From: Vitrella brassicaformis CCMP3155
Taxonomy: Eukaryota > Protista > Chromerida
DNA length: 64,000 nt
Assembly (NCBI GenBank): GCA_001179505.1
Contig: CDMY01000271.1
Location: 76,803-140,802 of the forward strand
Reading direction: 5' to 3'
Shown: one piece after another, positions 37,100-56,475 of the stretch
How the letters are laid out: the number at the start of each line of letters is the position of its first letter
Position numbering within the stretch: position 1 is the stretch's first letter
The notes under the pieces: generated by a model
The model's input: the letters and a program-made list of their open reading frames with translations, nothing else
Databases searched by the model: none
What the model was told of the DNA's origin: nothing
Position numbers and translations under genes: made by a program

Positions 37100-39066
37100 C
37101 TACGCAGCCTCTGTCTGCTGTGTCTGCTGTGTCTGCTGCTGCTGCTGCCTGTTGGTGGCCGACTTGAGCATGCCGACCACCTTGTCGCGTGTGGCGTTGA
37201 GGAGCGGGGTGGCATGCTCCCGCACCCGCACCGACAGGCCCTCCAGGTTGCCCTTGAGGTTCTCAATGGACGTGTTGGTGTACTCCTTGACGGGCACCGG
37301 AATCTGCAGGTACCCCATGTACACCGCAGCACCGATGCCGCCCGCGAGCACGAGCAGTGCCAGGATGGTGATGAGGATGGTGCGGCAGAGGGTGGATCGG
37401 CGAGGGGGCTGTGGCGCGCCCAGCAGAGGGCCGCTGGGATCCTCCTCCGTCATGCGCGGGGCCTCGGACGCCTCGGCTATCGTCGGCACCTCAGTGCGGA
37501 TCGATCGGTCGGTCATCATCGACTGACAAATATATAAACCAAGACACACAATCACCATCCGCCCCAGGTGTTGTGCCTCTGTCTGTCTGTGGTCTTCTGT
37601 CTGACCTTTTCCTGGGTCTCCTCTTGTGTGGTGTCCGTGGTGAGTGTGGCCCCGGTGGTCTCTCCGCCCTTGCTTCGCTCGACGGTCTTGCCCATGTCCT
37701 CGGTGCTCGCCGAAGCAGCAGGGGGCAGCTCCGCCTTGATCAACGGCCGGTGCTCCGCGTCAGGCTCGTCGCTGTCCTCACTCTTGCTCGGTGAATCCTG
37801 TAAGTAAGCAAACAGACACCAAAGACACCCATCCCATGAGAGAGGTTGTGGGTGCCAATCCTGTTAACTAGCCTTACTCCCCTCACCTGTCCGGGTGGCA
37901 TGTCGGCCCTCTGCTGGTACTGCACGCTCGATGGCGAGGCCGTTGCGGTGGCGGTGGCCCTCTCCACGTCCACAGTGGCATCGACGTCATCTGGCGGCTG
38001 AGAGGGTTCTGGCTCCTCCTCGTTGACGACCAGCTGCGGCTCGCTGGATGACTGTGCGGGGGGCTGGGCGGGGGGAGGCGCCGCCGACGCAGTGGCTGAC
38101 GGGCTGATCGAGGGATGCATAGATGGGATGGACAGGAGGGAGACAAATGTGCACTGCACATGTCTGTGAGTGTAGGGACCTTGGTGTCCGTGCGGTGCGT
38201 ACCCCTCGATGAGCAGTTGTCCCTTTCCGTCGGTGGTGACGTCCCCGAACTTGCCGTCGTTGACCGCGAAGTTGGAGGCCTCGGGCATGATGAACATGCG
38301 GTTGATGGAGAAGTCCTCCCAAGACACCTGGTCGCCAGGCTTCGTAATGACGTACTTGTACTCCTGTTGGTGACAGACAGACACCAGCAAACACACACAC
38401 AGGGTCCCAGTGGCCCACCGTTTGCCGTGTCTGTCTGCGTACGATCTGCATGCCGCTCTTGGACGATCTGAACTCGGTGACTGGCGACGACCACACGGGG
38501 AAGTTGTCCCCGTCTGTCGCCATCAACAACGCGTTGGACACCTGCCAAACAAAGGACACACACGGGCAACACAACACAACGTGGGTGAATGTCCTGGACA
38601 TCCATCGATTGATCTGCGCTGCTCTCTTTCTGTGGCCGGCATCCCTACATCCCAAGATCTGCACACAGACAGACAGGCATACAACCGGGACAGATGGACA
38701 TGACATGAAAACTGCACGTTGCTCTGCTCTGCTCTGCGCCTGGCTCCGCACGCATCTTGCTTACTTACCCCAGCTCGTCGATGTTGCCGACCACCCGCAC
38801 GGATTCACCCTGGGAGAACCAACACAACAACCAAACCAGGCAAACCAGAGCAAGGAAGTGCGCCGAGACCAGACCACCGTGCGGGCAGTCGTCGTTGTGA
38901 GGCGTACCAGCGAGGTGTTGCAGGAGATCTGAACGAAGCAGACACGGCAACACACAGACAAGCACAGCGGGGTCACCGTTGCTCTGTGCCGTTTCCAGCG
39001 GTCTTCACCGATCTCCCTGATGGTAGATCGTGTGGTTCTCACCTTAAATTTTCCGAAGCTCGACAT
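37100..39066 (-). CDS. CBM20 starch-binding domain protein with disordered linker and a C-terminal transmembrane anchor
   Basis: MSSFGKFK|ISCNT..|GESVRVVGNIDELG..|VSNALLMATDGDNFPVWS..|EYKYVITKPGDQVSWEDFSINR is a CBM20 signature. TM segment ILITILALLVLAGGIGAAVYMGYL lies near the C-terminus. Confidence 0.85.
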
Positions 39067-39218
39067 CGTGAGGGGAAGGAAGGACGCAGCGACGCCAAAA
39101 ACTTCCCCTTCTCGCCCGTCCCCTTTGTTGCGAGCTCAAGGTATGCGAGCTAAGCGTAGGTTCGGAGCGTGTTTTCCGGAGATCTGCAGGCCTGTGCGGC
39201 CACGTTGTCGTAGAAGCG

Positions 39219-40833
39219 ATGCCGTCATCGGGGCGTTTCCAGGTGCGGGACGGTGAAGAGAGCAACGGAGGGCGGGAAACGAAAGATGCGCTTGCCGACT
39301 GATCAATGGTGTGTCTGTTGTGTGTGGTCTGTCTGTGTGTGTTGGCGGTGTGCAGGTGACGTGTCAGACAGAGCTGGTAAGCACCGAGGCACTGAGGACC
39401 TATCTCTCTCACTTGTGGATCACATCTCCCTGTGCTATCATCACGGCTGTTGGTGTGCAGGGTGAGGAGGTCCGTGTTGTGGGCAGCATCGACGAGCTGG
39501 GCCGATGGGATGTAAGTCGCAAACACTGCCACACACCACAGACCGGACAGCGTCAACTGACGCATCCATCCATCGGTGGTGTGCTCGCCGCCCGTGTCAC
39601 TCAGGTGTCGAAGGCCCTCCCCCTCACCACCGACGAGCGCAGCTACCCTCTGTGGTCCTCGGAGGTCATGAAGTACCCCTCGCTCAAGACAGGCATGAAA
39701 ATGGTGGGTAACAACCTCTGCAACTCTCTTGCAACACAAGCAAGCGTTGGTTGCTTATTTGCGCTTGTGTGTAATGTCTGTCCTTAATGACTGCAATGCA
39801 GGAGTACAAGTATGTGGTGGTCACTCCCGATGGCGAGGTCAAGTGGGAGGAGTTCCCCCTCAACCGGCTGTTTGTGTTGCCGCCCTCGTCTCGCTTCCGC
39901 GTGACTGACGGGACGTTCGGTGAGATGTCGCCCAACGAGACCAACAGGTCCAAGGTCATTGTCGAGGTCTACGCACCCCCCGACTGGACAGTCGTCGATG
40001 GGTGAGGAAGGAACAGAAAACACCTTTAGAACAAACATGCCATGCCGTGCCAACGAGGTGTGGTGTCTGTCACATGCTTGAATGTCTGACAGGTCGTCGA
40101 TGGAGTCCCCGTCGCCCAACGTCTCTCCCCAGTACTACCCGCCCTCTCTGCCCCCTCCCCCGCCCCCCAAGCAGCCCCTCACAGAGACCAGCGAGACGGT
40201 CGTCATAGTCACCAAGGAGACCCCGCCGCCAACCGCACCCATTCCCATACCCCAGCCAGAGGAAACAGTCCCCACCACAGTCCCCTCTCCCTCACCCGCA
40301 GCAGCATCGCCTGACGCCACCACAGTCAGCCCCTCGTCGTCAATCGCGCGTATGGCTGCTGTGCCTGCCCCGGAGGAGACCAAGGAGATGGGGTCGCCGA
40401 CTCTGTCTGCCGAGGGCATGACGGCCGACAGCGAGGGAGATCTGGACGAGGGCAGCCATGCCCCCGTTACGGGGGAGGGTGTGGTGGTTATGAGCGACGT
40501 CAAAGAGGCCTTGTCGCGTATCTCGGAGGGTGAGGAACTGACCAACGATGATGTCAGCGGCGGTGAAACCAACAAAGTGCAGCAGCAGGTAAAGGGCAAG
40601 CCAAGCCAGCTCGTCATTCGTGTCTCATATCTGCAGACATTGTGTCGCTTTTTTGTCCGTGTGTCTTGCTGTTATATGCTCAGAGTGCCCCCGTGTGTGT
40701 GTCTGATGTACGCCAAGTGATGCCTCCCGCGCCTCCAAACCGGTCCCTGTTCGGCCCTTCCTCACGCAAGTCGACCCCTGCAGACATCGAACGATCCCGG
40801 GCATTCCTCAGCCGCATGTTCGGGGGCGTCTAG
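39219..40833 (+). CDS. CBM20 starch-binding domain protein with Pro/Thr/Ser-rich tail; paralog of the upstream gene
   Basis: MPSSGRFQ|VTCQTE..|GEEVRVVGSIDELGRWD|VSKALPLTTDERSYPLWSS..|EYKYVVVTPDGEVKWEEFPLNR, with the same exon layout as the minus-strand paralog and no TM segment seen. Confidence 0.85.
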
Positions 40834-45254: not shown

Positions 45255-46802
45255 TCATCTCATACCAATGCTAGAAGGGCCCCCCCGTCCCCCCGACCCG
45301 AGGGAGAGCTTGACAGCCGCCCCAGCTGCCGGCACCAGCTCCTCCGCGCCCCTGTCCTCCCCCCGCCTCAGTGCACGGTTCCTTCTCCGCAAAAGTGCTA
45401 GCTTCTCGGGCGCCTGCGTCTTGACGAGGTTGAGGCGGTCCCGCAGGTCGGAGTAGTCCTCGCTCTCTACCACCTTGCACTTGTAGTATAAGTCGCGCCG
45501 CTTCTTGGGGTAGAGGTAGAGCATCAGGAAGTCGGCTGCCAGGGTGGCGGTGCGGAGGAGGGCCATGCAGGCGCCTATCTGGATGACAATGAGGGTGAGG
45601 GCGACCTTCCTGCCGATGCCCTGCGAGTCGACGAGGATGCGGATGCCCCGCATAAAGTACGCGTCTCGCCGGTCGGTCTTGCTGCCGCTGTCTCGGTAGT
45701 GGTGCGCTCTCTTCTGCGTGAAGCCCCCACTCTGGGTGCCGATCTGCTCTGTGGTCGATGCGTTGAAGTCACGATCCAGCCGCTCCACCTTGACGTCATA
45801 CGGCTCACACTTCATCGTGACGTCGCAGTCCCACAGGAAAGTGACCCCCAGCAGGACGCCGGTGTCGCTCACGGCGTCGATGGTCAGCGATGAATGAGTT
45901 TTGTTGAGCAGCCCTGCCAGGGTGATGTTGCGGAACTCAGGGATGGAGGCCACAAAGAGGTAGTTGCCGATGTTAGGGAAGGCGATGCCCGCCTGCAGGT
46001 CGAGGACGAGCTTGTCCAGCCCCTTGACCTTGGTGATCTCCATGTCGCTCGACTTGTCGGCCGTGGCCTCATTGATGGTCGGACACCAGTTGGCGCCCTT
46101 GCAGTGCTTTGTGGCCTCGTCACACGTGGCTGGCGGCCGGCAGGGACACGGGTCGGTGAAGTCAACGCAGTCGCCCACCTGCTGGCCCCTCTGCACCATG
46201 ATCTTTGAAGCGATGAAAACGCCTGAAGCCTCGATCTCTGGGAAGCGGAGGTCGGATATGTCAAAGGCCCTCTGGGGGTTGGCGGCGTCGATGCTCTTGC
46301 CCTTGACTTTGGCTACGATAAACCCGTTGCCGGGCTCTTGGAACTGGTGGCGGCCCTGCTTCCACAGATTGAAGATGGCGAAATACAGAATGATCATTGT
46401 CACAATGCTCCAATACAGAAGTCCCAGCCACCGATCCTGAAGCCATCCATCCATCCATATGTGTGTGTGGGTGTGTTGGCTGCAAGGCAATGGTGATGCA
46501 CCTCACCTGGATGTTGACGACTTTGAATGTGCGGTACCTGCACAGCACAGAATGGACAGCGCGCCGCAGCACACAGACCGATGCACAGTGTGGATGCGTC
46601 AGATCTGTCCATCAACTCACGCGAACACACGGTCAAGATCCACTCCACAGAAAAGCTGCGGATCCTCATCCCCCTCGCGATGGTACGCACCGCTTGCTGC
46701 TGCTGCTGCAGCGGCGCTGGACGACGTGTGCTGCGCTCCTGGGCCGCCAGACATTGCAGGAAGCCTCTTCCCTCGGAGATTTACGTCAAAGCTCGCAACC
46801 AT
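45255..46802 (-). CDS. P2X purinoceptor-family trimeric ion channel (start at 46802 or 46754)
   Basis: RVFA|YRTFKVVNIQ|DRWLGLLYWSIVTMIILYFAI (TM1 with the YxTxK motif), AKVKG, QQVGDC, WCP, GVLLGVTFLWDCD, RGIRILV..GIGRK, TM2 IQIGACMALLRTATLAADFLML and C-terminal YYKCK. Confidence 0.92.
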
Positions 46803-50093: not shown

Positions 50094-50828
50094 TGAGGAC
50101 GGTCAGCAAAAAGCGCCTGGATCAGCGCATTGGTGCTCAAACATCCTGCCTTGGGGCACGTTGCGCGAAACGGAAGTTTCAGCCATACACTTGCAGAAGA
50201 GATCTGACATTCCCACGGTCCCCTGGCTTGCTGCAGCCCTTCCACTTGAATCAACTGGTGGCGAGAAGACGCAAACAATGAACACGGCTGCCATTCTTGC
50301 AAGGAACGGGAGAGCATTGTTGCAGCTGGACCATGAGCTGAACGGCACTGCAAGCGGCAGTAAGGCGTGCCTATGGACGACTCATTGACTGAAGGACAGC
50401 TTTATGTTCTTTACATGGCGTCAGACAGCCAGCACAGACCAAGTCTCACGGCGCTGTTCATCAAGCCTTTCGGGCAGCCAGTGACCGAAATGCCACAGTG
50501 ATGTCCAATACAGAAGAAATATCAGGGGTACCGCACGGGCACAGGCAGCCTAATCATTGCGAATAAATCGTCCAGTATCGACTCCCAAGGCCGTCATAAA
50601 TCAAAGAATGCAACCACGTGTGTGCCCCGTGGGGCGAGGCGTCGTGTGTGCCCGTAACGTGCTTTCTTTCAAGTGACCCTGGTGGGCAGTGCAGTTATTT
50701 CTGATTCGGCATGACTGGTGACTCGCATTTATCCTTTCGATTCGATAGCTTGCATCGCATCTGCTATTCTCTGATGTCACCATTGCTATGTTGAACCGCC
50801 ATGAGACGACAAGAGAAAAGAAACAACA

Positions 50829-53800
50829 CTAAGACCACCCCAATCCCATCCCCAGTACGCTGGTCAATGAGTGATCCAAACACACAGGCTGCCTCAGGCC
50901 CATCTCCTCACACACCACACCCATGACCTCCTTCCGAACGCGCTGCTCAAGCGACAGATGATTCACCAACACGACTATGGACACGTTCTCCTGAGGATAC
51001 GATACAGCGAACGATCCCCCAAACGACTGATACCCTACTGCCTCACTCCGACCATCAGCCCATCGCCTTATTGACTCTGAAGGAAGAGGGAAGGAAGGGG
51101 AAGGCGAGCGCTGCTGGCCAAGCCCAAGGCCTCCGCGGGCAGCAGGAGGGGACGGCGTACAAGCAGACGGAGAGGGGTCACCCACGCGCAGCACTTCCAA
51201 GCCCTCAGAAAAGCTGCCGAACAGCATAGGAAAGCCATGAAGCGAAGAAAGAAAAGCTCTCTCGTGTGCCTGTGCCTCACCATCTCCTCCCGAAGAGCAC
51301 TGAGTCCTCTGAGGCCTTCGCCACCAGCAGTCGCCTCCGCGAGTCGCTGTCCAGCGTGGAAAACAACCCCCTCCCCCTGAGATCGTGCCACGTCATGGCC
51401 GAGAGGAGCGATGCCAACGCACGTGCAGACGCGTAAACGCCAAGCGCCGGCGGTGGGCTGGCGCGCACGCGCTGCGCATTGAGCATGGAAGGGTCCGTGA
51501 CGATCTCGGTCATCGATGCCAGCTGCCCAAAGATGCCGCCTGTTGCCGAGAAAGGCCCATGCTCCCACTCTTCCCGCTTGCTGTCGTTCTCATCCTTGCT
51601 CTCAAATAGCGCACCGATGTCATCGAGATGAAGAGAGAAGAGGGCCGCCGCGGCTTTGGCGATTCCATTCGACACAAGGGCGATGGATCTGCCGCCCTCG
51701 TCACGACCCAGCGCCCCCCCGCCACCACCCTCTGTTTCAGTCTCGAGGCCAAATCGAAGCTCATTCTCCACGCGCAGCGCCCTCGCCAGTCGTTGAGTGA
51801 GTCGACTCAATGACACGTCCCCTCCAGCTGCCTTCAGCAGACGGCCACAGATCACGCCCATGACATGGTTGTGATACTTGGCCGTGCCACGGTCGCGTGT
51901 CGGCTTGGCTCGACAGACCATGGCCTCCACCTTAGATGGGTCCAAGAGGTCGCTGGCGGGCGTTTGTGGTGGGACGGCGCTCGCCAGTCCAGCCGTGTGC
52001 GATAGCACCTCGCCGCATGTCACGTCGCTCTTGAAATCGGGCCAGTGGCTGCTCACAGGATCGTCAAGACTCATCCTCCTCTCGGCGACGGAAGAGTAGA
52101 TGAGAGCCGTCAAGACTACCTTCGATAAATCCATGGCCGGCATCAGCGTGTGCTCGTCCACTGGCCGCGCATCACTTCCCCCCACTACGCCGGCTGCCAG
52201 GCTGACGAGTGGACTCATACACTCACCTCTCATGATGGCCACCTGAATGCCGAGTGACTGCTCATCATCCTCCCACAGGCTGGCGACAAGGTTGCGCAGA
52301 CGCTGCTCGAGGCGAGACGGAACACAAGAGGGTGGAAGGGGCGCGAGGTGCGCGAGGGCACGCTGGTCGGGAGGGGTGCTGGAAAGAATAGTGAGACGCG
52401 CGTAGAGGGACATGGTATCCAGGTACGACACCTGAAGAATACGTACACATCCAGATATCATACATGCCATGCGCCGACTGAGTGGATTGCGTGCTGTTTG
52501 GCATTACTTTCGTGTCGAGGGTGACCGACAGGCCGCGAATGAGGCCCAGGACACGGAAGATAAAGCCGAGCTCGTCTGGAATCTGCGTCATGAAACGACT
52601 GACGAAAACAGAAAGGAGAAAGGTAGCTGATGGACAGGTGAGCAGATGGCAATGTGTTCCGTGCCTTTCGGTGTTTCCTTCGCTTCGGTCTCGCTCTCTT
52701 TGTTTCCTCCTCATACGAAAGAACTTCTTGGTGTCTTCGTAACTCTCGTCCCTGAGAGGAACGCCAGTCACTGTGTACATCAGCTCGCTCCTTCTCCGTT
52801 GTGCCTCTTACTTAGTCTTTGTGTCCCTCATAAGGTAGCGAAAGAACTCTAGGTCGCGCTCGGGTTTGTGGTCCGACTGTGAGTTGGCGTACCCCACATC
52901 GCGCAGGGCTTTCGCTGCTCCCTCCACATCAAACTCATGTAAGCTCGTCACGAGCTGACAGTAGTGGACTCGCTGGGCAGGGGTAATCGATAGCGACATC
53001 CCAAAGTCGAGGAGCACCAGTTTAGCCTGGTCGCCATCGATGGACACCATCAGATTGCCGGCGTGGGCTGCACACACACACGCCGATTGGGTGCGTGGGG
53101 TGGGCGTGCGTGGGTGGCTATGTTCGTTGACTGACGATCAGCATTGAAGAAGCCCCACGTGAATAGCTGCTGCGAGTACACCTGAAGAACACGCATAGAT
53201 GCACCGACAGAGTGGATTGCGTGCCGTTTGGCATTCGTACCTGTATGACTCTGAGCATAAGATGCCTGGTGTCGACCTGATAGAGGGCCAGCTGGTCCTT
53301 ATCGGTCAATTTGAATCCGTGAATGAACGACATCGTTAGGACGCGTGGCGAAGTTAACGACAGGTGAGGCGTGGGGACGATGACATCAGACAAACTGACA
53401 GACAAAATCGAGACAAAGGGGGTCTTCTGCCGGCCTTTTCCTAGTGAGCCCCGTTCTCCCTTCAGATGGTTACCCTCCGTCCTTAATGTGTCGTGCCATC
53501 TTGATCAAATTGTCAGCTTCTTGCCGAAAGTCCAGCTCCTTATCCATGACCTTCTGCTGCCAGGCCTGCGCGAGAAATCCAGGACGCAAACCGATTCCGT
53601 CATGTTTAATGTATCCATCCATTTCTCTCTCCGGTGTGTGTCTGTGTGTGTCTGTGTGTGTGCATTGTCGATGCATCGTTTCACCCAAATGTCTGTACCT
53701 GAAGCACTTGAAGAATCACTCCGAGCTGCGACATGCACGTGAGTGAAATCATTTGTTGTGTTGTGTTTTGCTGTGCGTCGTTGAGTGATCTGACCTGTGG

Positions 53801-56155
53801 GTTGAGCCACTGGAGTGTCCTGGCAATGCACAGGGCGTAGAACAAATCACTCCTGACCAGCTGCGCTATGCCCCTGTGCTGGAGCTTGATCACCACCTCA
53901 TCGCCAGACCGTAGGACGGCGTGATGGACCTGGGCGATTGAGGCACTGGCCATGGGGGTCATGTCAAAGAACGAGAACAGCTCATCGAGCTCGCAACCAA
54001 ACTCCTCGCGGATTACACGCCGGACATAGCCTGGTGGACACGCTGGCAGGTCATCCTGAAGGAACAGCAAAAAAGGATCAACGCCGTCTCCTCCTTCAGG
54101 GTGCCAGGTGTTGCTACGTTTCTGTTTACCTGCAGCTTTGCCAGCGTCTGGCTCCATTCTCTCGGCACGATATCAGCTCGCCTGCGAAGTGACAGAGCAC
54201 CAACGATACCACTGTATACTCACCAATACGCACGCATTCATGCTGCTTACCCGCCTAGGTATTGCCCAAACTTTACGAAAAGACTTTGCAGCCGGATGAA
54301 AGTGTCGCAGACATAGGGCGCCAGCCAACAATCGAGAGTAGCGAAGAGCCGTAGCCGCTCGGCCCCCTCTATGCCCCTTCTCTCCACCCACTTGTTGACG
54401 ACAAAGTACATGCCTATGCTGAACGTTGCGCTTGTCGCGATCATGACTCCCCTTCTCAGCTTGGAAAAGAGAGAGACAGGTATCATCAGCAAGAGTGCCA
54501 GTATCCCCGTGAGAATCTTGCGAGCCATCATGGCATGCAGCAGTCGACTGCATTGGACTGCAAGCAGTCGGTTCCATGAACTGAGCCCTGCCGTCCGGCC
54601 AAAAAGAAGTAGCCGCAGCGCGAGTGACAGGAAGACCGCAAATGCTCCGCAGGCGTCCGAAAGAGCGAAGAAGACGGTGAAGGCCAAGCTGAGGACGGTC
54701 GCGGAGGCGGATGAAGGAACGATATCGCCGAGGAGCGGCCATGAGACGGGGAACACAATCAGCAACCACACGAGGATGCCCAGTGCTGTTCTCAGCGTCC
54801 CCATCCACCTCTCGTAGGCACCTTTCGCATCACCCGTTCCGCTGTCTGAAAACAGCCTCCACCCCCCGAGCGCGCTCTTAGTCTGCTGCACCATCCTCTC
54901 CAACCGATGCATCCTCCGCAAAAGCTGCTGCTGGCTCTGATGGTTGGCGAGCACGGCACCCTGACACTTGATGGGCTCACGTTGCTCTCGGGAGATCTGG
55001 CCCTTGAGTCGATTGGCGAGAATGCCCTCGTCTGTCGCAGTCGGGTCAAGCAGGCCGCCTCCCTGTTGACGTGGTTCCTGGACGGACCGTGTCGCCTCGG
55101 GCGAGTTGGTGGCCGCGCTCGCGGGCAGACGGATCGACGCGATAGCTGTTGTTTGCTCGCGGGTGGTGTTGACCGACGTGAGGAAGGCGGGGTTGACGCC
55201 GCGCCTCGTGTTTGTTGACGTGCTAGTAGTCTCGACAAATGACGGCGAGAGAGACGGTGACTCTTTCGCTCGCCTCTCGGCTGCAAACGGCTGGAGTAGA
55301 CCTGAAGCAAGTGCCGCGCATTCGTTGCACAGGCGGCGTCTGAAAAGACAACATAATCTCACTTCCTCAAAGAGTGCTGAACTCCTACACAGTGCACCAA
55401 CTCTTCCTTCCTTTGCTCTTGTTCTCACCGAAACAGGCGGTGTTTGCTGCATCTCCCACAGCAGAGGACCCCGCACACCTGCAGAGAAGAGACGATGATA
55501 AACTGTGTCGATCATCTGTCCCGCCGCGGCTCACCCTGCAGTGATGGCGCCGCTTGACGAGGGTAAATCGAGAGCCACATCGTGTGCAAGTAGGGCCATT
55601 CGGCGCCCACTGTCCGCGAGTGAGCAGCAGTTTACCCTCCTCCCTCTCGCGCACTTCACCCTCCCTGACGCGCCTCGCGGCCGACATGAGAAGAGGAATC
55701 AGTGACTTGATCATGCCCTTGTCCCCGTCGATGCGCACATGCCCCTTAATCACGGCCGTGACTGGATTCAGCCGCCTTTCGAGGAGCAACTGCAGTCCCT
55801 GCAAACCAACGAGTTAATCAATACATCCATCCCATGCACCTTTTGTCTCATATAATCCATCCACATGAGTGGATGTCCGTATCTGTGTGCCTACTTCTCC
55901 GCTCAGTGTGACGCTCGTGGCGACCTGCGACTCGCGTATGCCATTGCTGGGGTGGAGTGGTCGGAGGCTCGAGAGATCGGTGGTCACGCGGGGCTGGCCA
56001 TGTGCATCGATGCCGAGATAGTAGATGTGCGGTGTGGTGTCGGACGCCAGCACCAGCTTCACGACTCTGTTATCTCGTTGCATGGCTGCTGGTGGACTCC
56101 ACGATCTGAGAGAGTCTTGAACAGCCTCAACGAAAGGGGCAACGGTCACCTCCAT
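50829..56155 (-). CDS. Multidomain protein: SCP2 lipid-binding domain - FYVE zinc finger - TM helices - ABC1/UbiB atypical kinase - beta-lactamase-fold domain
   Basis: In-frame spliced exons. SCP2: VTLSGE|GLQLLLERRLNPVTAVIKGHVRIDGD. FYVE: WAPN..CTRC..F..KRRHHCR|VCG..CCGRCS..RLCNEC. Hydrophobic helices follow. ABC1: FVKFGQYLGG, PMASASIAQVH, VVIKLQHRG, ELDFRQEA, FFNADPHAGN, LLDFG. Beta-lactamase fold: GIQVAIMRG, LDDPVSSHWPDF, VLSHTAGL, SARALA, VGYQSFGGS. Confidence 0.85.
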
Positions 56156-56475
56156 GTTTCAAAAACTCGACCTGTGTTTTATCTTGCTTGGTTGGTTATT
56201 GTGTTTAACGAGACTCGTGTCTGTGATCTTGGTCTAAGCACAGCTCGCTAGTGTTTCGTTTCACGCAGCCCCGCCCGAGTCTGTGTTTGCACTGCACACA
56301 GCCATTTAAATGGTGCTGGAGGTCTTTCATTCTGTTGTAGGTCCGCCGCTACGCAAAAAGGGACACAGGCTGTTTGCAGTCTCCTGGGCCAAAAACAAGC
56401 CCAACATAACACAAGCAGCAGCCCACTTTGACAAAAGAACGAAAGCTAAGTCACGTCACCCAGCAGCCCCCAAAC

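What the first reader, a model, noticed from the sequence alone, without database searches (positions are those of the whole stretch)
50829..56155. SCP2-FYVE-TM-UbiB kinase-beta-lactamase fusion: candidate self-contained lipid/quinone trafficking machine
Seen: phase-consistent GT-AG junctions (55895>55798 and onward) link an SCP2 domain, a FYVE finger with 8 Cys and RRHHCR, several TM helices, an ABC1/UbiB kinase with intact KxGQ, AxASIAQV, DPHxGN and DFG, and a beta-lactamase-fold domain in one frame. Established: ABC1-beta-lactamase fusions exist in plants. SCP2 binds hydrophobic lipids, and bacterial UbiJ is an SCP2 protein that works with UbiB in ubiquinone synthesis. Yeast UbiB-family Cqd1/Cqd2 redistribute CoQ. 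FYVE binds PI3P, which marks endosomes and the apicoplast. Inference: this Rosetta-stone fusion could extract and carry prenyl-quinones or other lipids at PI3P membranes outside mitochondria. I do not know this five-part architecture from any described protein.
Basis: partly seen in the sequence, partly recalled or inferred. Interest (0 to 1): 0.8.

Follow-up and report, generated by a model that had tools for sequence, protein, structure and literature searches.

The report
Lipid-handling kinase fusion, membrane-anchored, conserved in protists
This alga (Vitrella brassicaformis) has one real gene joining a lipid-carrier domain, a membrane-address finger, membrane anchors, a UbiB-type ATPase/kinase and an inactive-looking beta-lactamase-like domain. 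The same layout occurs in many distant protists, so it is an old, unstudied protein family that may move oily molecules between membranes.

Summary
Window 56155->50829 (minus strand) is one 15-exon gene of 1421 codons. All junctions are in phase: 13 GT-AG and 1 GC-AG. Spliced RNA contigs confirm 9 of the 14 introns. The model equals the deposited Vitrella brassicaformis protein CEL98500.1 / A0A0G4EM34.

Domains:
- SCP2 fold, weak by sequence but clear in the predicted structure
- short FYVE finger
- four hydrophobic helices
- intact ABC1/UbiB domain
- beta-lactamase-fold domain

- The architecture is not unique. SCP2-FYVE-TM-ABC1-beta-lactamase proteins occur in Chromera, labyrinthulids, a raphidophyte and choanoflagellates. 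Related forms occur in ichthyosporeans, Corallochytrium and a green alga.
- In haptophyte members of the same clade a PX domain replaces FYVE, and choanoflagellate members add a START domain. This supports phosphoinositide targeting plus lipid handling.
- In the Vitrella clade the beta-lactamase nucleophile Ser is Asp/Glu and the other catalytic motifs decay, so this domain is probably not a hydrolase.

I found no paper describing the family. Function is inferred: a cytosol-facing, membrane-anchored UbiB ATPase that works with SCP2 at PI3P membranes. Quinone specificity is untested. The scan noted a similar FYVE-TM-ABC1-beta-lactamase gene on another piece of this genome (s1-242748).

The parts
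50829..56155 (-). Complete coding region: 15 exons, 1421 codons plus stop. Equals the Vitrella brassicaformis protein CEL98500.1 / A0A0G4EM34 (P0151).
   Evidence: Exon table with phases. All exon peptides found in P0151. Identity of P0151.
50735..50828 (-). 3' untranslated region, as far as the RNA contig reaches.
   Evidence: RNA contig X2 record 8 runs 50735-51213 and is spliced to 51281-51734.
55634..56155 (-). SCP2-fold domain, residues 1-142 (exon 1, intron 1 at 55799-55894, and the start of exon 2).
   Evidence: Pfam SCP2 is below cut-off in Vitrella (16.6 bits) but above it in orthologues (28.5-41.7 bits). AF2 model pLDDT 84.5. Top Foldseek hits are SCP2 proteins, E 8e-7, TM 0.57-0.69.
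55300..55618 (-). Short FYVE zinc finger, residues 148-205, split over exons 2, 3 and 4. It holds WAPN, RRHHCR, R-L-C and the 8 canonical Cys plus one extra.
   Evidence: Sequence reading. Pfam FYVE 35.0 bits against a cut-off of 27.8. Model pLDDT 92-97 over the finger. Foldseek hits to the endofin, EEA1 and Leishmania LM5-1 FYVE domains.
54802..55299 (-). Low-complexity linker, residues 206-371. It is transcribed.
   Evidence: RNA contigs at 54833-54993 (X1) and 54865-55029 (X2). No Pfam hit.
54463..54801 (-). Four hydrophobic, TM-like helices, about residues 372-484.
   Evidence: Kyte-Doolittle 19-mer peaks of 1.7-2.25. Relatives have two to several such segments at the same place, most of them two.
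52592..54357 (-). ABC1/UbiB atypical kinase domain, residues 520-882, over exons 4-13. Motifs: KFGQ 54262-54273, ASASIAQVH 53924-53950, VVIKLQ 53879-53896, NADPHAGN 53054-53145 (spans intron 10), LLDFG 53000-53014.
   Evidence: Pfam ABC1 215 bits. Alignment to COQ8B (9tvk), E 3e-26, with all motifs aligned. Coordinates.
50940..52293 (-). Beta-lactamase-fold domain (PF00144), residues 957-1385. The nucleophile position is Asp (D-L-S-K, 52120-52131). Y-H-N is kept (51868-51879). The third motif is degenerate (Q-S-F-G-G, 51015-51029).
   Evidence: Pfam 94.6 bits. Alignments to family VIII carboxylesterases 5gmx and 8j5v place D1011 on the catalytic Ser. Family alignment.
53699..53725 (-). 27-nt micro-exon (exon 7).
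   Evidence: Both flanking joints are seen in RNA contig X1.
52599..52664 (-). GC-AG intron (intron 12).
   Evidence: The joint is seen in both RNA runs. Ends are CT..GC on the + strand.

Best explanation
This is one real, transcribed Vitrella brassicaformis gene. It encodes a member of an old, uncharacterised family of eukaryotic UbiB (ABC1) proteins.

Shown here, in order along the protein:
- SCP2-fold lipid-binding domain
- short FYVE finger with its basic phosphoinositide-binding residues intact
- disordered linker
- four hydrophobic helices
- UbiB-type domain with every ATP-binding and catalytic motif intact
- beta-lactamase-fold domain that has lost the serine nucleophile

The N-terminus starts directly with the folded SCP2 domain. 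I saw no stretch ahead of it that could be a signal or transit peptide, but I ran no targeting predictor.

Inferred:
- With an even number of membrane spans, both the SCP2-FYVE head and the UbiB/beta-lactamase body face the cytosol from an endomembrane.
- The FYVE finger (PX in haptophyte relatives) holds or steers the protein to PI3P-rich membranes such as endosomes, vacuole or autophagic membranes, possibly bridging two membranes.
- The UbiB domain uses ATP to lift a hydrophobic, probably isoprenoid, lipid out of the bilayer.
- The SCP2 domain (plus START in choanoflagellate relatives) receives and carries that lipid.
- The beta-lactamase-like domain acts as a non-catalytic ligand-binding or regulatory module in the Vitrella clade.

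The cargo is unknown. A prenyl-quinone is a reasonable guess by analogy only.
For: - Gene model and splicing.
- One exon (55339-54251) joins the FYVE end, linker, TM helices and the UbiB start. RNA contigs lie on the linker.
- Domains. SCP2 and FYVE folds.
- Same architecture in Chromera (P0123), Hondaea (P0075), Mucochytrium (P0195), Chattonella (P0152, a transcript) and Salpingoeca infusionum (P0106, a complete transcript ORF, plus START). FYVE-ABC1-beta-lactamase without a detected SCP2 occurs in Didymoeca (plus START), Chromosphaera, Corallochytrium and Cymbomonas.
- An ABC1-domain tree puts Vitrella in a 100/100-supported clade in which two SCP2-PX members interleave with SCP2-FYVE members. 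Two unrelated phosphoinositide-binding modules therefore sit at the same position.
- Two to several hydrophobic segments, most often two, lie between FYVE/PX and ABC1 in relatives; plain ABC1-beta-lactamase proteins have none ahead of ABC1.
- Published view of UbiB proteins: they are proposed to extract UQ precursors from the membrane for the soluble UbiJ-containing complex (bioRxiv 10.64898/2026.03.05.709815), and they regulate cellular CoQ distribution in yeast (PMC8346625, listed).
Against: - There is no experimental datum for any family member, and no paper was found.
- No RNA contig covers 55031-56015, so the N-terminal three introns and continuity with the kinase rest on the open frame, the deposited model and orthologues.
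- The WxxD motif reads WAPN and the FYVE hairpin is unusually short, so PI3P binding is not assured.
- TM number and topology come from a hydropathy scan only.
- SCP2 is below the Pfam cut-off in Vitrella itself.
- The SCP2 fold matches generic SCP2 better than UbiJ-SCP2, so the UbiJ-UbiB analogy is not specific.
- Some plant ABC1K proteins are reported as protein kinases (PMC8956952, listed), so lipid extraction is not the only possible activity.
Confidence: 0.55

Rival explanations
1. A PI3P-recruited protein kinase. The ABC1 domain phosphorylates proteins at endosomal or vacuolar membranes, and SCP2 acts only as a lipid sensor that regulates it.
For: All kinase-like catalytic residues are intact. 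Weak Pkinase and RIO1 matches appear in a relative. Plant ABC1K6 is reported as a Mn2+-dependent kinase (PMC8956952, listed).
Against: The UbiB-specific KxGQ motif and Ala-rich loop are present. From my own knowledge of COQ8, these occlude the protein-substrate cleft and favour ATPase activity. The recurrent joining with lipid-transfer domains (SCP2, START) points to a lipid substrate.
Confidence: 0.15
2. A lipid-modifying enzyme. The beta-lactamase-fold domain is an esterase or amidase acting on a lipid delivered by SCP2 and UbiB, as in family VIII carboxylesterases.
For: The best solved relatives are family VIII carboxylesterases. Holozoan, raphidophyte and plain ABC1-beta-lactamase relatives keep S-x-x-K, the Tyr and H-x-G.
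Against: In Vitrella the nucleophile is Asp (D-L-S-K) and the third motif is lost. Across its clade the Lys and Tyr also vary: DLTR, DLSQ, ELSN, and Y to S or V. A serine-hydrolase mechanism is therefore excluded for this gene.
Confidence: 0.1
3. A gene-model artefact: two neighbouring genes (SCP2-FYVE, and TM-ABC1-beta-lactamase) wrongly merged.
For: No RNA contig covers 55031-56015, and introns 1-3 are unconfirmed by reads.
Against: The last FYVE cysteines and the ABC1 KxGQ start lie in one 1089-nt exon with no stop. Transcript-derived ORFs of Chattonella and Salpingoeca infusionum hold SCP2, FYVE, ABC1 and beta-lactamase together, and that of Didymoeca holds FYVE, ABC1, beta-lactamase and START. 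The N-termini of relatives align with Met1.
Confidence: 0.03

Closest known systems
Chromera velia Cvel_28739 (A0A0G4HLH0, P0123) and Hondaea fermentalgiana GBG26407.1 (P0075): uncharacterised orthologues
   Same: Both have SCP2-FYVE-TM-ABC1-beta-lactamase with Asp at the beta-lactamase nucleophile position. They fall in the same 100/100 clade. Identity over the aligned part is 41% and 38%.
   Different: Lengths and linkers differ (1681 and 1395 aa). Neither has been studied. Their names come from automatic annotation ('FYVE-type domain-containing protein', 'Lateral signaling target protein 2-like').
Plain ABC1-beta-lactamase fusion proteins of plants and algae (Atlas clusters 'ABC1 atypical kinase-like/Beta-lactamase domain-containing protein', commonest in Streptophyta)
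   Same: The UbiB domain is followed by a PF00144 domain.
   Different: They have no SCP2, no FYVE or PX, and no hydrophobic segments ahead of ABC1. The KxGQ motif sits about 120-170 residues from the N-terminus, and the S-x-x-K serine is kept.
COQ8A/COQ8B, yeast Cqd1/Cqd2 and bacterial UbiB (UbiB family)
   Same: They share the KxGQ motif, the Ala-rich loop and the catalytic Lys, Glu, Asp, Asn and DFG residues. The family is linked to handling of prenyl-quinone lipids (PMC8346625).
   Different: Those proteins are mitochondrial or bacterial and have no added lipid-transfer or phosphoinositide-binding domains. This protein has no stretch ahead of its folded N-terminal domain that could serve as a presequence, and it carries FYVE.
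E. coli UbiJ (SCP2) working with UbiB
   Same: An SCP2 lipid-binding domain is functionally coupled to a UbiB ATPase. Here the two are in one chain, a Rosetta-stone type of link.
   Different: The SCP2 here matches generic eukaryotic SCP2 (E 8e-7) better than UbiJ-SCP2 (E 1e-4). There is no sign of common descent of the pairing.
Protrudin (ZFYVE27), from my own knowledge and not tested here
   Same: It has a hydrophobic hairpin anchor in one membrane plus a cytosolic FYVE finger that reaches phosphoinositides on another, forming ER-endosome contacts.
   Different: Protrudin has no SCP2, UbiB or beta-lactamase parts. It is a resemblance of layout only.

Membership tests
UbiB / ABC1 atypical kinase family (PF03109) | Profile match above the curated cut-off | tested here: met
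   215 bits against a cut-off of 22.9, residues 570-818. COQ8B 9tvk E 3e-26.
UbiB / ABC1 atypical kinase family (PF03109) | KxGQ motif and an Ala-rich loop in place of the Gly-rich loop | tested here: met
   KFGQ at 548-551. ASASIAQVH at 608-616 aligns to AAASIGQVH of COQ8B.
UbiB / ABC1 atypical kinase family (PF03109) | Catalytic Lys, alpha-C Glu, catalytic-loop Asp/Asn and DFG Asp | tested here: met
   VVIKLQ, FRQEADN, NADPHAGN and LLDFG all align to COQ8B.
UbiB / ABC1 atypical kinase family (PF03109) | Lipid-stimulated ATPase activity | not testable with these tools
   This needs purified protein.
FYVE zinc finger (PF01363) | Profile match above the cut-off, and the FYVE fold | tested here: met
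   35.0 bits against 27.8. Foldseek to endofin 3t7l (TM 0.73, rmsd 2.5), LM5-1 1z2q (41% identity) and EEA1 1joc.
FYVE zinc finger (PF01363) | Eight Zn-binding Cys, R(R/K)HHCR and RVC motifs | tested here: met
   CxxC, RRHHCRVC, CxxC and R-L-C-x-x-C are present.
FYVE zinc finger (PF01363) | WxxD motif | tested here: inconclusive
   It reads WAPN (Asp to Asn). The same Asn occurs in several relatives, while Chromera has WEPD.
FYVE zinc finger (PF01363) | Binding of PI3P | not testable with these tools
   This needs a liposome or lipid-strip assay.
SCP2 sterol-carrier fold (PF02036) | Profile match above the cut-off | tested here: not met
   16.6 bits against 21.3 in Vitrella. Orthologues pass at 28.5-41.7 bits, and a family HMM aligns residues 1-129.
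SCP2 sterol-carrier fold (PF02036) | Alpha/beta SCP2 fold | tested here: met
   AF2 model pLDDT 84.5. The top 21 Foldseek hits are SCP2 proteins, including UbiJ-SCP2, with target TM 0.44-0.69.
Serine beta-lactamase / PBP / family VIII esterase (PF00144) | Profile match above the cut-off | tested here: met
   94.6 bits against 27.
Serine beta-lactamase / PBP / family VIII esterase (PF00144) | S-x-x-K with a nucleophile Ser | tested here: not met
   D1011-L-S-K. The Asp aligns to the Ser of S-T-T-K in 5gmx and S-C-T-K in 8j5v. The clade has D/E at this position.
Serine beta-lactamase / PBP / family VIII esterase (PF00144) | Tyr of Y-x-N, and the third motif (K/H)-(T/S)-G | tested here: inconclusive
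   Y1096-H-N is kept. The third motif is Q-S-F-G-G where relatives have G-H-(T/S/A)-G.

The most novel reading that the evidence does not exclude
This family is a pan-eukaryotic, extra-mitochondrial UbiB machine, lost in animals, fungi and land plants. It couples ATP-driven extraction of isoprenoid lipids (CoQ, plastoquinone or similar) to SCP2/START-mediated transfer at PI3P-marked membrane contact sites. That would make it a dedicated non-vesicular route for distributing prenyl-quinones beyond their organelle of synthesis, with a retained pseudo-beta-lactamase as the cargo-binding or gating module.
Probability: 0.2. Interest if true: 0.85.

Novelty: new variant of a known kind. Interest (0 to 1): 0.6.

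Why it matters
What UbiB proteins do at the molecular level is a long-standing question, and lipid extraction is proposed but not proven.

Here a UbiB domain is permanently joined to lipid-carrier domains (SCP2, sometimes START) and to either of two unrelated phosphoinositide-binding modules (FYVE or PX). This layout is conserved from chromerid algae to choanoflagellates. It is independent comparative support for a lipid-handling role.

It also points to a UbiB function on cytosol-facing endomembranes, outside the mitochondrial and plastid settings studied so far.

Several carriers are, to my knowledge, genetically tractable (thraustochytrids related to Hondaea, Corallochytrium, Chromosphaera), so the idea can be tested directly.

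The conserved Ser-to-Asp/Glu change gives a natural pair of catalytic and non-catalytic beta-lactamase-fold partners to compare.

Tried and rejected
- Pfam on single exon translations did not find SCP2. Exon 1 gave nothing and exon 2 gave E 0.044. The domain is split by intron 1 and is divergent.
- An Atlas feature search with exon 2 gave no usable hit.
The identical database record P0151, returned by the listing of cluster members, was used for all full-length work.
- The word-based search with P0151 scored only the 8000 candidates sharing most words and returned 19 hits. It gives examples, not a census.
- No apicomplexan (Toxoplasma or Plasmodium) protein appeared. These searches cannot prove absence, and I ran no further search on it.
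- Five literature searches for the domain combination gave nothing relevant. The Stentor kinome preprint mentions FYVE and ABC1 only separately.
- The RNA runs gave no coverage of 55031-56015, so the N-terminal introns could not be checked with reads.
- A specific UbiJ affinity of the SCP2 domain is not supported.
- Merged gene model: considered and rejected (see rivals).

Full report
**1. What is in the sequence**

The region 50829-56155 holds a minus-strand gene. Reading the minus strand gave the first junctions:
- Exon 1 (56155-55895) ends before GTAGGC.
- Exon 2 starts at 55798 after TTGCAG and ends with the codons for RRHHCR, followed by GTGAGC.
- Exon 3 (55478-55429, 50 nt) encodes VCGVLCCGRCSKHRLF.
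- Exon 4 starts at 55339 and continues RRLCNEC.

A script that tracked only coordinates and phases, translating exon by exon with no joined sequence, gave 15 exons, 4266 nt and 1421 codons. Every junction is in phase and no exon has a stop in its frame. Thirteen introns are GT-AG and one is GC-AG.

**2. Transcript evidence**

Two public runs (X1 and X2, flagged as possible RNA) hold contigs identical to the window that skip nine stretches with CT..AC or CT..GC ends on the + strand. The DNA runs X3 and X4 cover the whole region colinearly and show no joints. After choosing the register with GT/GC..AG ends, the confirmed introns are:
- 51214-51280
- 52599-52664 (GC-AG)
- 52752-52811
- 53182-53240
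- 53395-53473
- 53566-53698
- 53726-53794
- 54056-54129
- 54182-54250

These include the two introns flanking a 27-nt micro-exon. The transcript reaches 50735 at its 3' end. RNA contigs also lie on the linker inside exon 4 (54833-55029). None covers 55031-56015, so introns 1-3 (and introns 10 and 13) are not confirmed by reads.

**3. Identity**

A search of the 1.84-billion-protein library with the beta-lactamase exon, given by reference, found a 271-aa fragment at 99% identity. Its 90% cluster also holds P0151, a 1421-aa protein: CEL98500.1 / UniRef A0A0G4EM34, 'FYVE-type domain-containing protein', Vitrella brassicaformis CCMP3155. All my exon peptides occur in P0151 at the positions the exon table predicts. 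The deposited model and mine are therefore the same.

**4. Domains**

Pfam on P0151:

| Domain | Residues | Bits | Cut-off |
|---|---|---|---|
| ABC1 | 570-818 | 215 | 22.9 |
| Beta-lactamase | 957-1385 | 94.6 | 27 |
| FYVE | 156-200 | 35.0 | 27.8 |
| SCP2 | 75-124 | 16.6 | 21.3 |

SCP2 is below the cut-off in Vitrella, so I tested the fold.
- An alignment of 22 N-terminal regions of relatives (A1) gave an AlphaFold2 model of residues 1-215 with mean pLDDT 84.5.
- Foldseek against the PDB returned SCP2 proteins as the best 21 matches. These include Yarrowia and human SCP2, insect SCP2 and UbiJ-SCP2, with E from 8e-7 and target TM 0.44-0.69.
- FYVE domains (EEA1, Leishmania LM5-1, endofin at TM 0.73) matched the second half of the model.

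The FYVE finger has the eight canonical Cys plus one extra, RRHHCR and R-L-C. It reads WAPN where WxxD is usual, and it has an unusually short hairpin, a feature shared by most of the family.

Four hydrophobic 19-mers lie at about residues 372-484.

The UbiB domain aligns to COQ8B (E 3e-26). KFGQ, the Ala-rich loop, the Lys, Glu and Asp/Asn residues and DFG are all in place. DPHAGN is created by splicing exons 10 and 11.

**5. The beta-lactamase-fold domain is probably not a serine hydrolase**

Its best solved relatives are family VIII carboxylesterases. In both printed alignments Asp1011 of D-L-S-K sits on the nucleophile Ser of S-x-x-K.

A family alignment shows two classes.
- The Ser class includes Chattonella, choanoflagellates, Chromosphaera, Corallochytrium and plain ABC1-beta-lactamase proteins. 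It keeps S-x-x-K, the Tyr and G-H-x-G.
- The Asp/Glu class includes Vitrella, Chromera, Hondaea, Mucochytrium, Chrysochromulina, Picozoa and several metagenomic proteins. It has Asp or Glu at the nucleophile position, and the Lys, Tyr and His positions vary.

**6. The architecture elsewhere**

Screening the hits with the exon peptides, small family HMMs and Pfam, with sources, gave:

| Architecture | Organisms |
|---|---|
| SCP2-FYVE-ABC1-beta-lactamase | Chromera velia, Hondaea fermentalgiana, Mucochytrium quahogii, Chattonella subsalsa, metagenomic proteins |
| SCP2-FYVE-ABC1-beta-lactamase-START | Salpingoeca infusionum |
| FYVE-ABC1-beta-lactamase-START | Didymoeca costata |
| FYVE-ABC1-beta-lactamase | Chromosphaera perkinsii, Corallochytrium, Cymbomonas tetramitiformis |
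| SCP2-PX-ABC1-beta-lactamase | Chrysochromulina tobinii (named source); P0115, P0140 and other unnamed metagenome proteins |

- The Chattonella and choanoflagellate proteins are ORFs of single assembled transcripts, which independently shows that the parts are co-transcribed.
- An Atlas cluster of 80 members (about 1555 aa) carries ABC1, beta-lactamase and SCP2. Two further clusters, commonest in Streptophyta, carry ABC1 plus beta-lactamase only.
- Relatives with an N-terminal module have two to several hydrophobic segments ahead of ABC1, most often two. Plain ABC1-beta-lactamase proteins have none there.

**7. Tree**

I built a maximum-likelihood tree of 60 ABC1 domains. I left out near-identical cluster members, the truncated P0168 whose full-length cluster mate P0195 was kept, two distant Volvocales proteins, and any protein whose matched ABC1 span was under 330 residues.

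Vitrella and Chromera are sisters (99/99). They sit inside a 100/100 clade with the labyrinthulid, Picozoa and haptophyte-type members, all of the Asp/Glu class. In that clade the two SCP2-PX proteins interleave with SCP2-FYVE proteins. The PX segments show the RR(Y/W)S and R-x-x-L-x-x-Y(L/F) signatures. Two unrelated phosphoinositide-binding modules at the same position argue that phosphoinositide targeting is what selection keeps.

**8. How it most likely works (inference)**

- The protein starts directly with a folded SCP2 domain, and relatives' N-termini align with Met1. No stretch ahead of it could be a signal or transit peptide, though I ran no targeting predictor.
- The membrane spans are probably even in number (four here, two in most relatives). 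That places the head and the body on the same, cytosolic, side.
- UbiB proteins are proposed to extract quinone precursors from membranes for a soluble SCP2 (UbiJ)-containing complex (bioRxiv 10.64898/2026.03.05.709815). They also control CoQ distribution in yeast (PMC8346625).
- The simplest reading is a membrane-anchored, PI3P-directed UbiB ATPase that hands a hydrophobic lipid to its own SCP2 (and START) domain, possibly across a membrane contact. This would resemble ER-anchored FYVE tethers such as protrudin (my own knowledge).
- The cargo is unknown. The beta-lactamase-like domain of the Vitrella clade would bind or gate rather than hydrolyse.
- Rivals are a PI3P-recruited protein kinase, a lipid esterase (excluded for this gene by the missing Ser) and a merged gene model (very unlikely).

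**9. Novelty**

The gene and its relatives are in public databases with automatic domain names, so the architecture is neither unique nor unannotated. Five full-text searches found no paper that describes or studies a FYVE/PX-UbiB or SCP2-UbiB fusion. I rate it a new variant of a known kind: a UbiB family member with an undescribed, conserved, extra-organellar layout.

The scan had already noted a similar 'FYVE-TM-ABC1-beta-lactamase' gene on another piece of this genome (s1-242748). I did not examine that locus.

Noticed in passing
window 53182-53240 and 52432-52507: Introns 9 and 13 of this same gene share a 37-nt core at 92% identity (53199-53235 and 52469-52505). There are 2 matches in the window against 0 expected by chance. 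This may be an intron duplication or an introner-like element.
   Followed up: partly
window 56183-56224: A 42-nt element lies 28 nt upstream of the ATG and holds the palindrome ACGAGtCTCGT. It is multi-copy in the organism: word depth is about 2900 against 23 in a DNA run and about 250 against 5 in RNA runs, and many contigs have different flanks on both sides. It is single-copy in this window. Its nature is unknown; a dispersed repeat or a shared promoter/5'UTR element are possibilities.
   Followed up: partly
window 52599-52664: A GC-AG intron, confirmed by spliced contigs in both RNA runs.
   Followed up: yes
window 53699-53725: A 27-nt micro-exon (9 codons) inside the ABC1 domain, confirmed by an RNA contig.
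   Followed up: yes
relatives P0032 (Didymoeca) and P0106 (Salpingoeca infusionum): The choanoflagellate members of the family carry an extra C-terminal START lipid-transfer domain after the beta-lactamase domain.
   Followed up: partly
relatives P0140, P0115/P0162 (Chrysochromulina) and P0014, P0128: Some members have SCP2-PX in place of SCP2-FYVE. P0014 and P0128 have the SCP2-like head with neither FYVE nor PX detected by my small HMMs.
   Followed up: partly
window 45255-46802 and 37100-40833: Other first-stage notes lie on this window: a P2X-type channel gene and a head-to-head CBM20 gene pair. I did not examine either.
   Followed up: no
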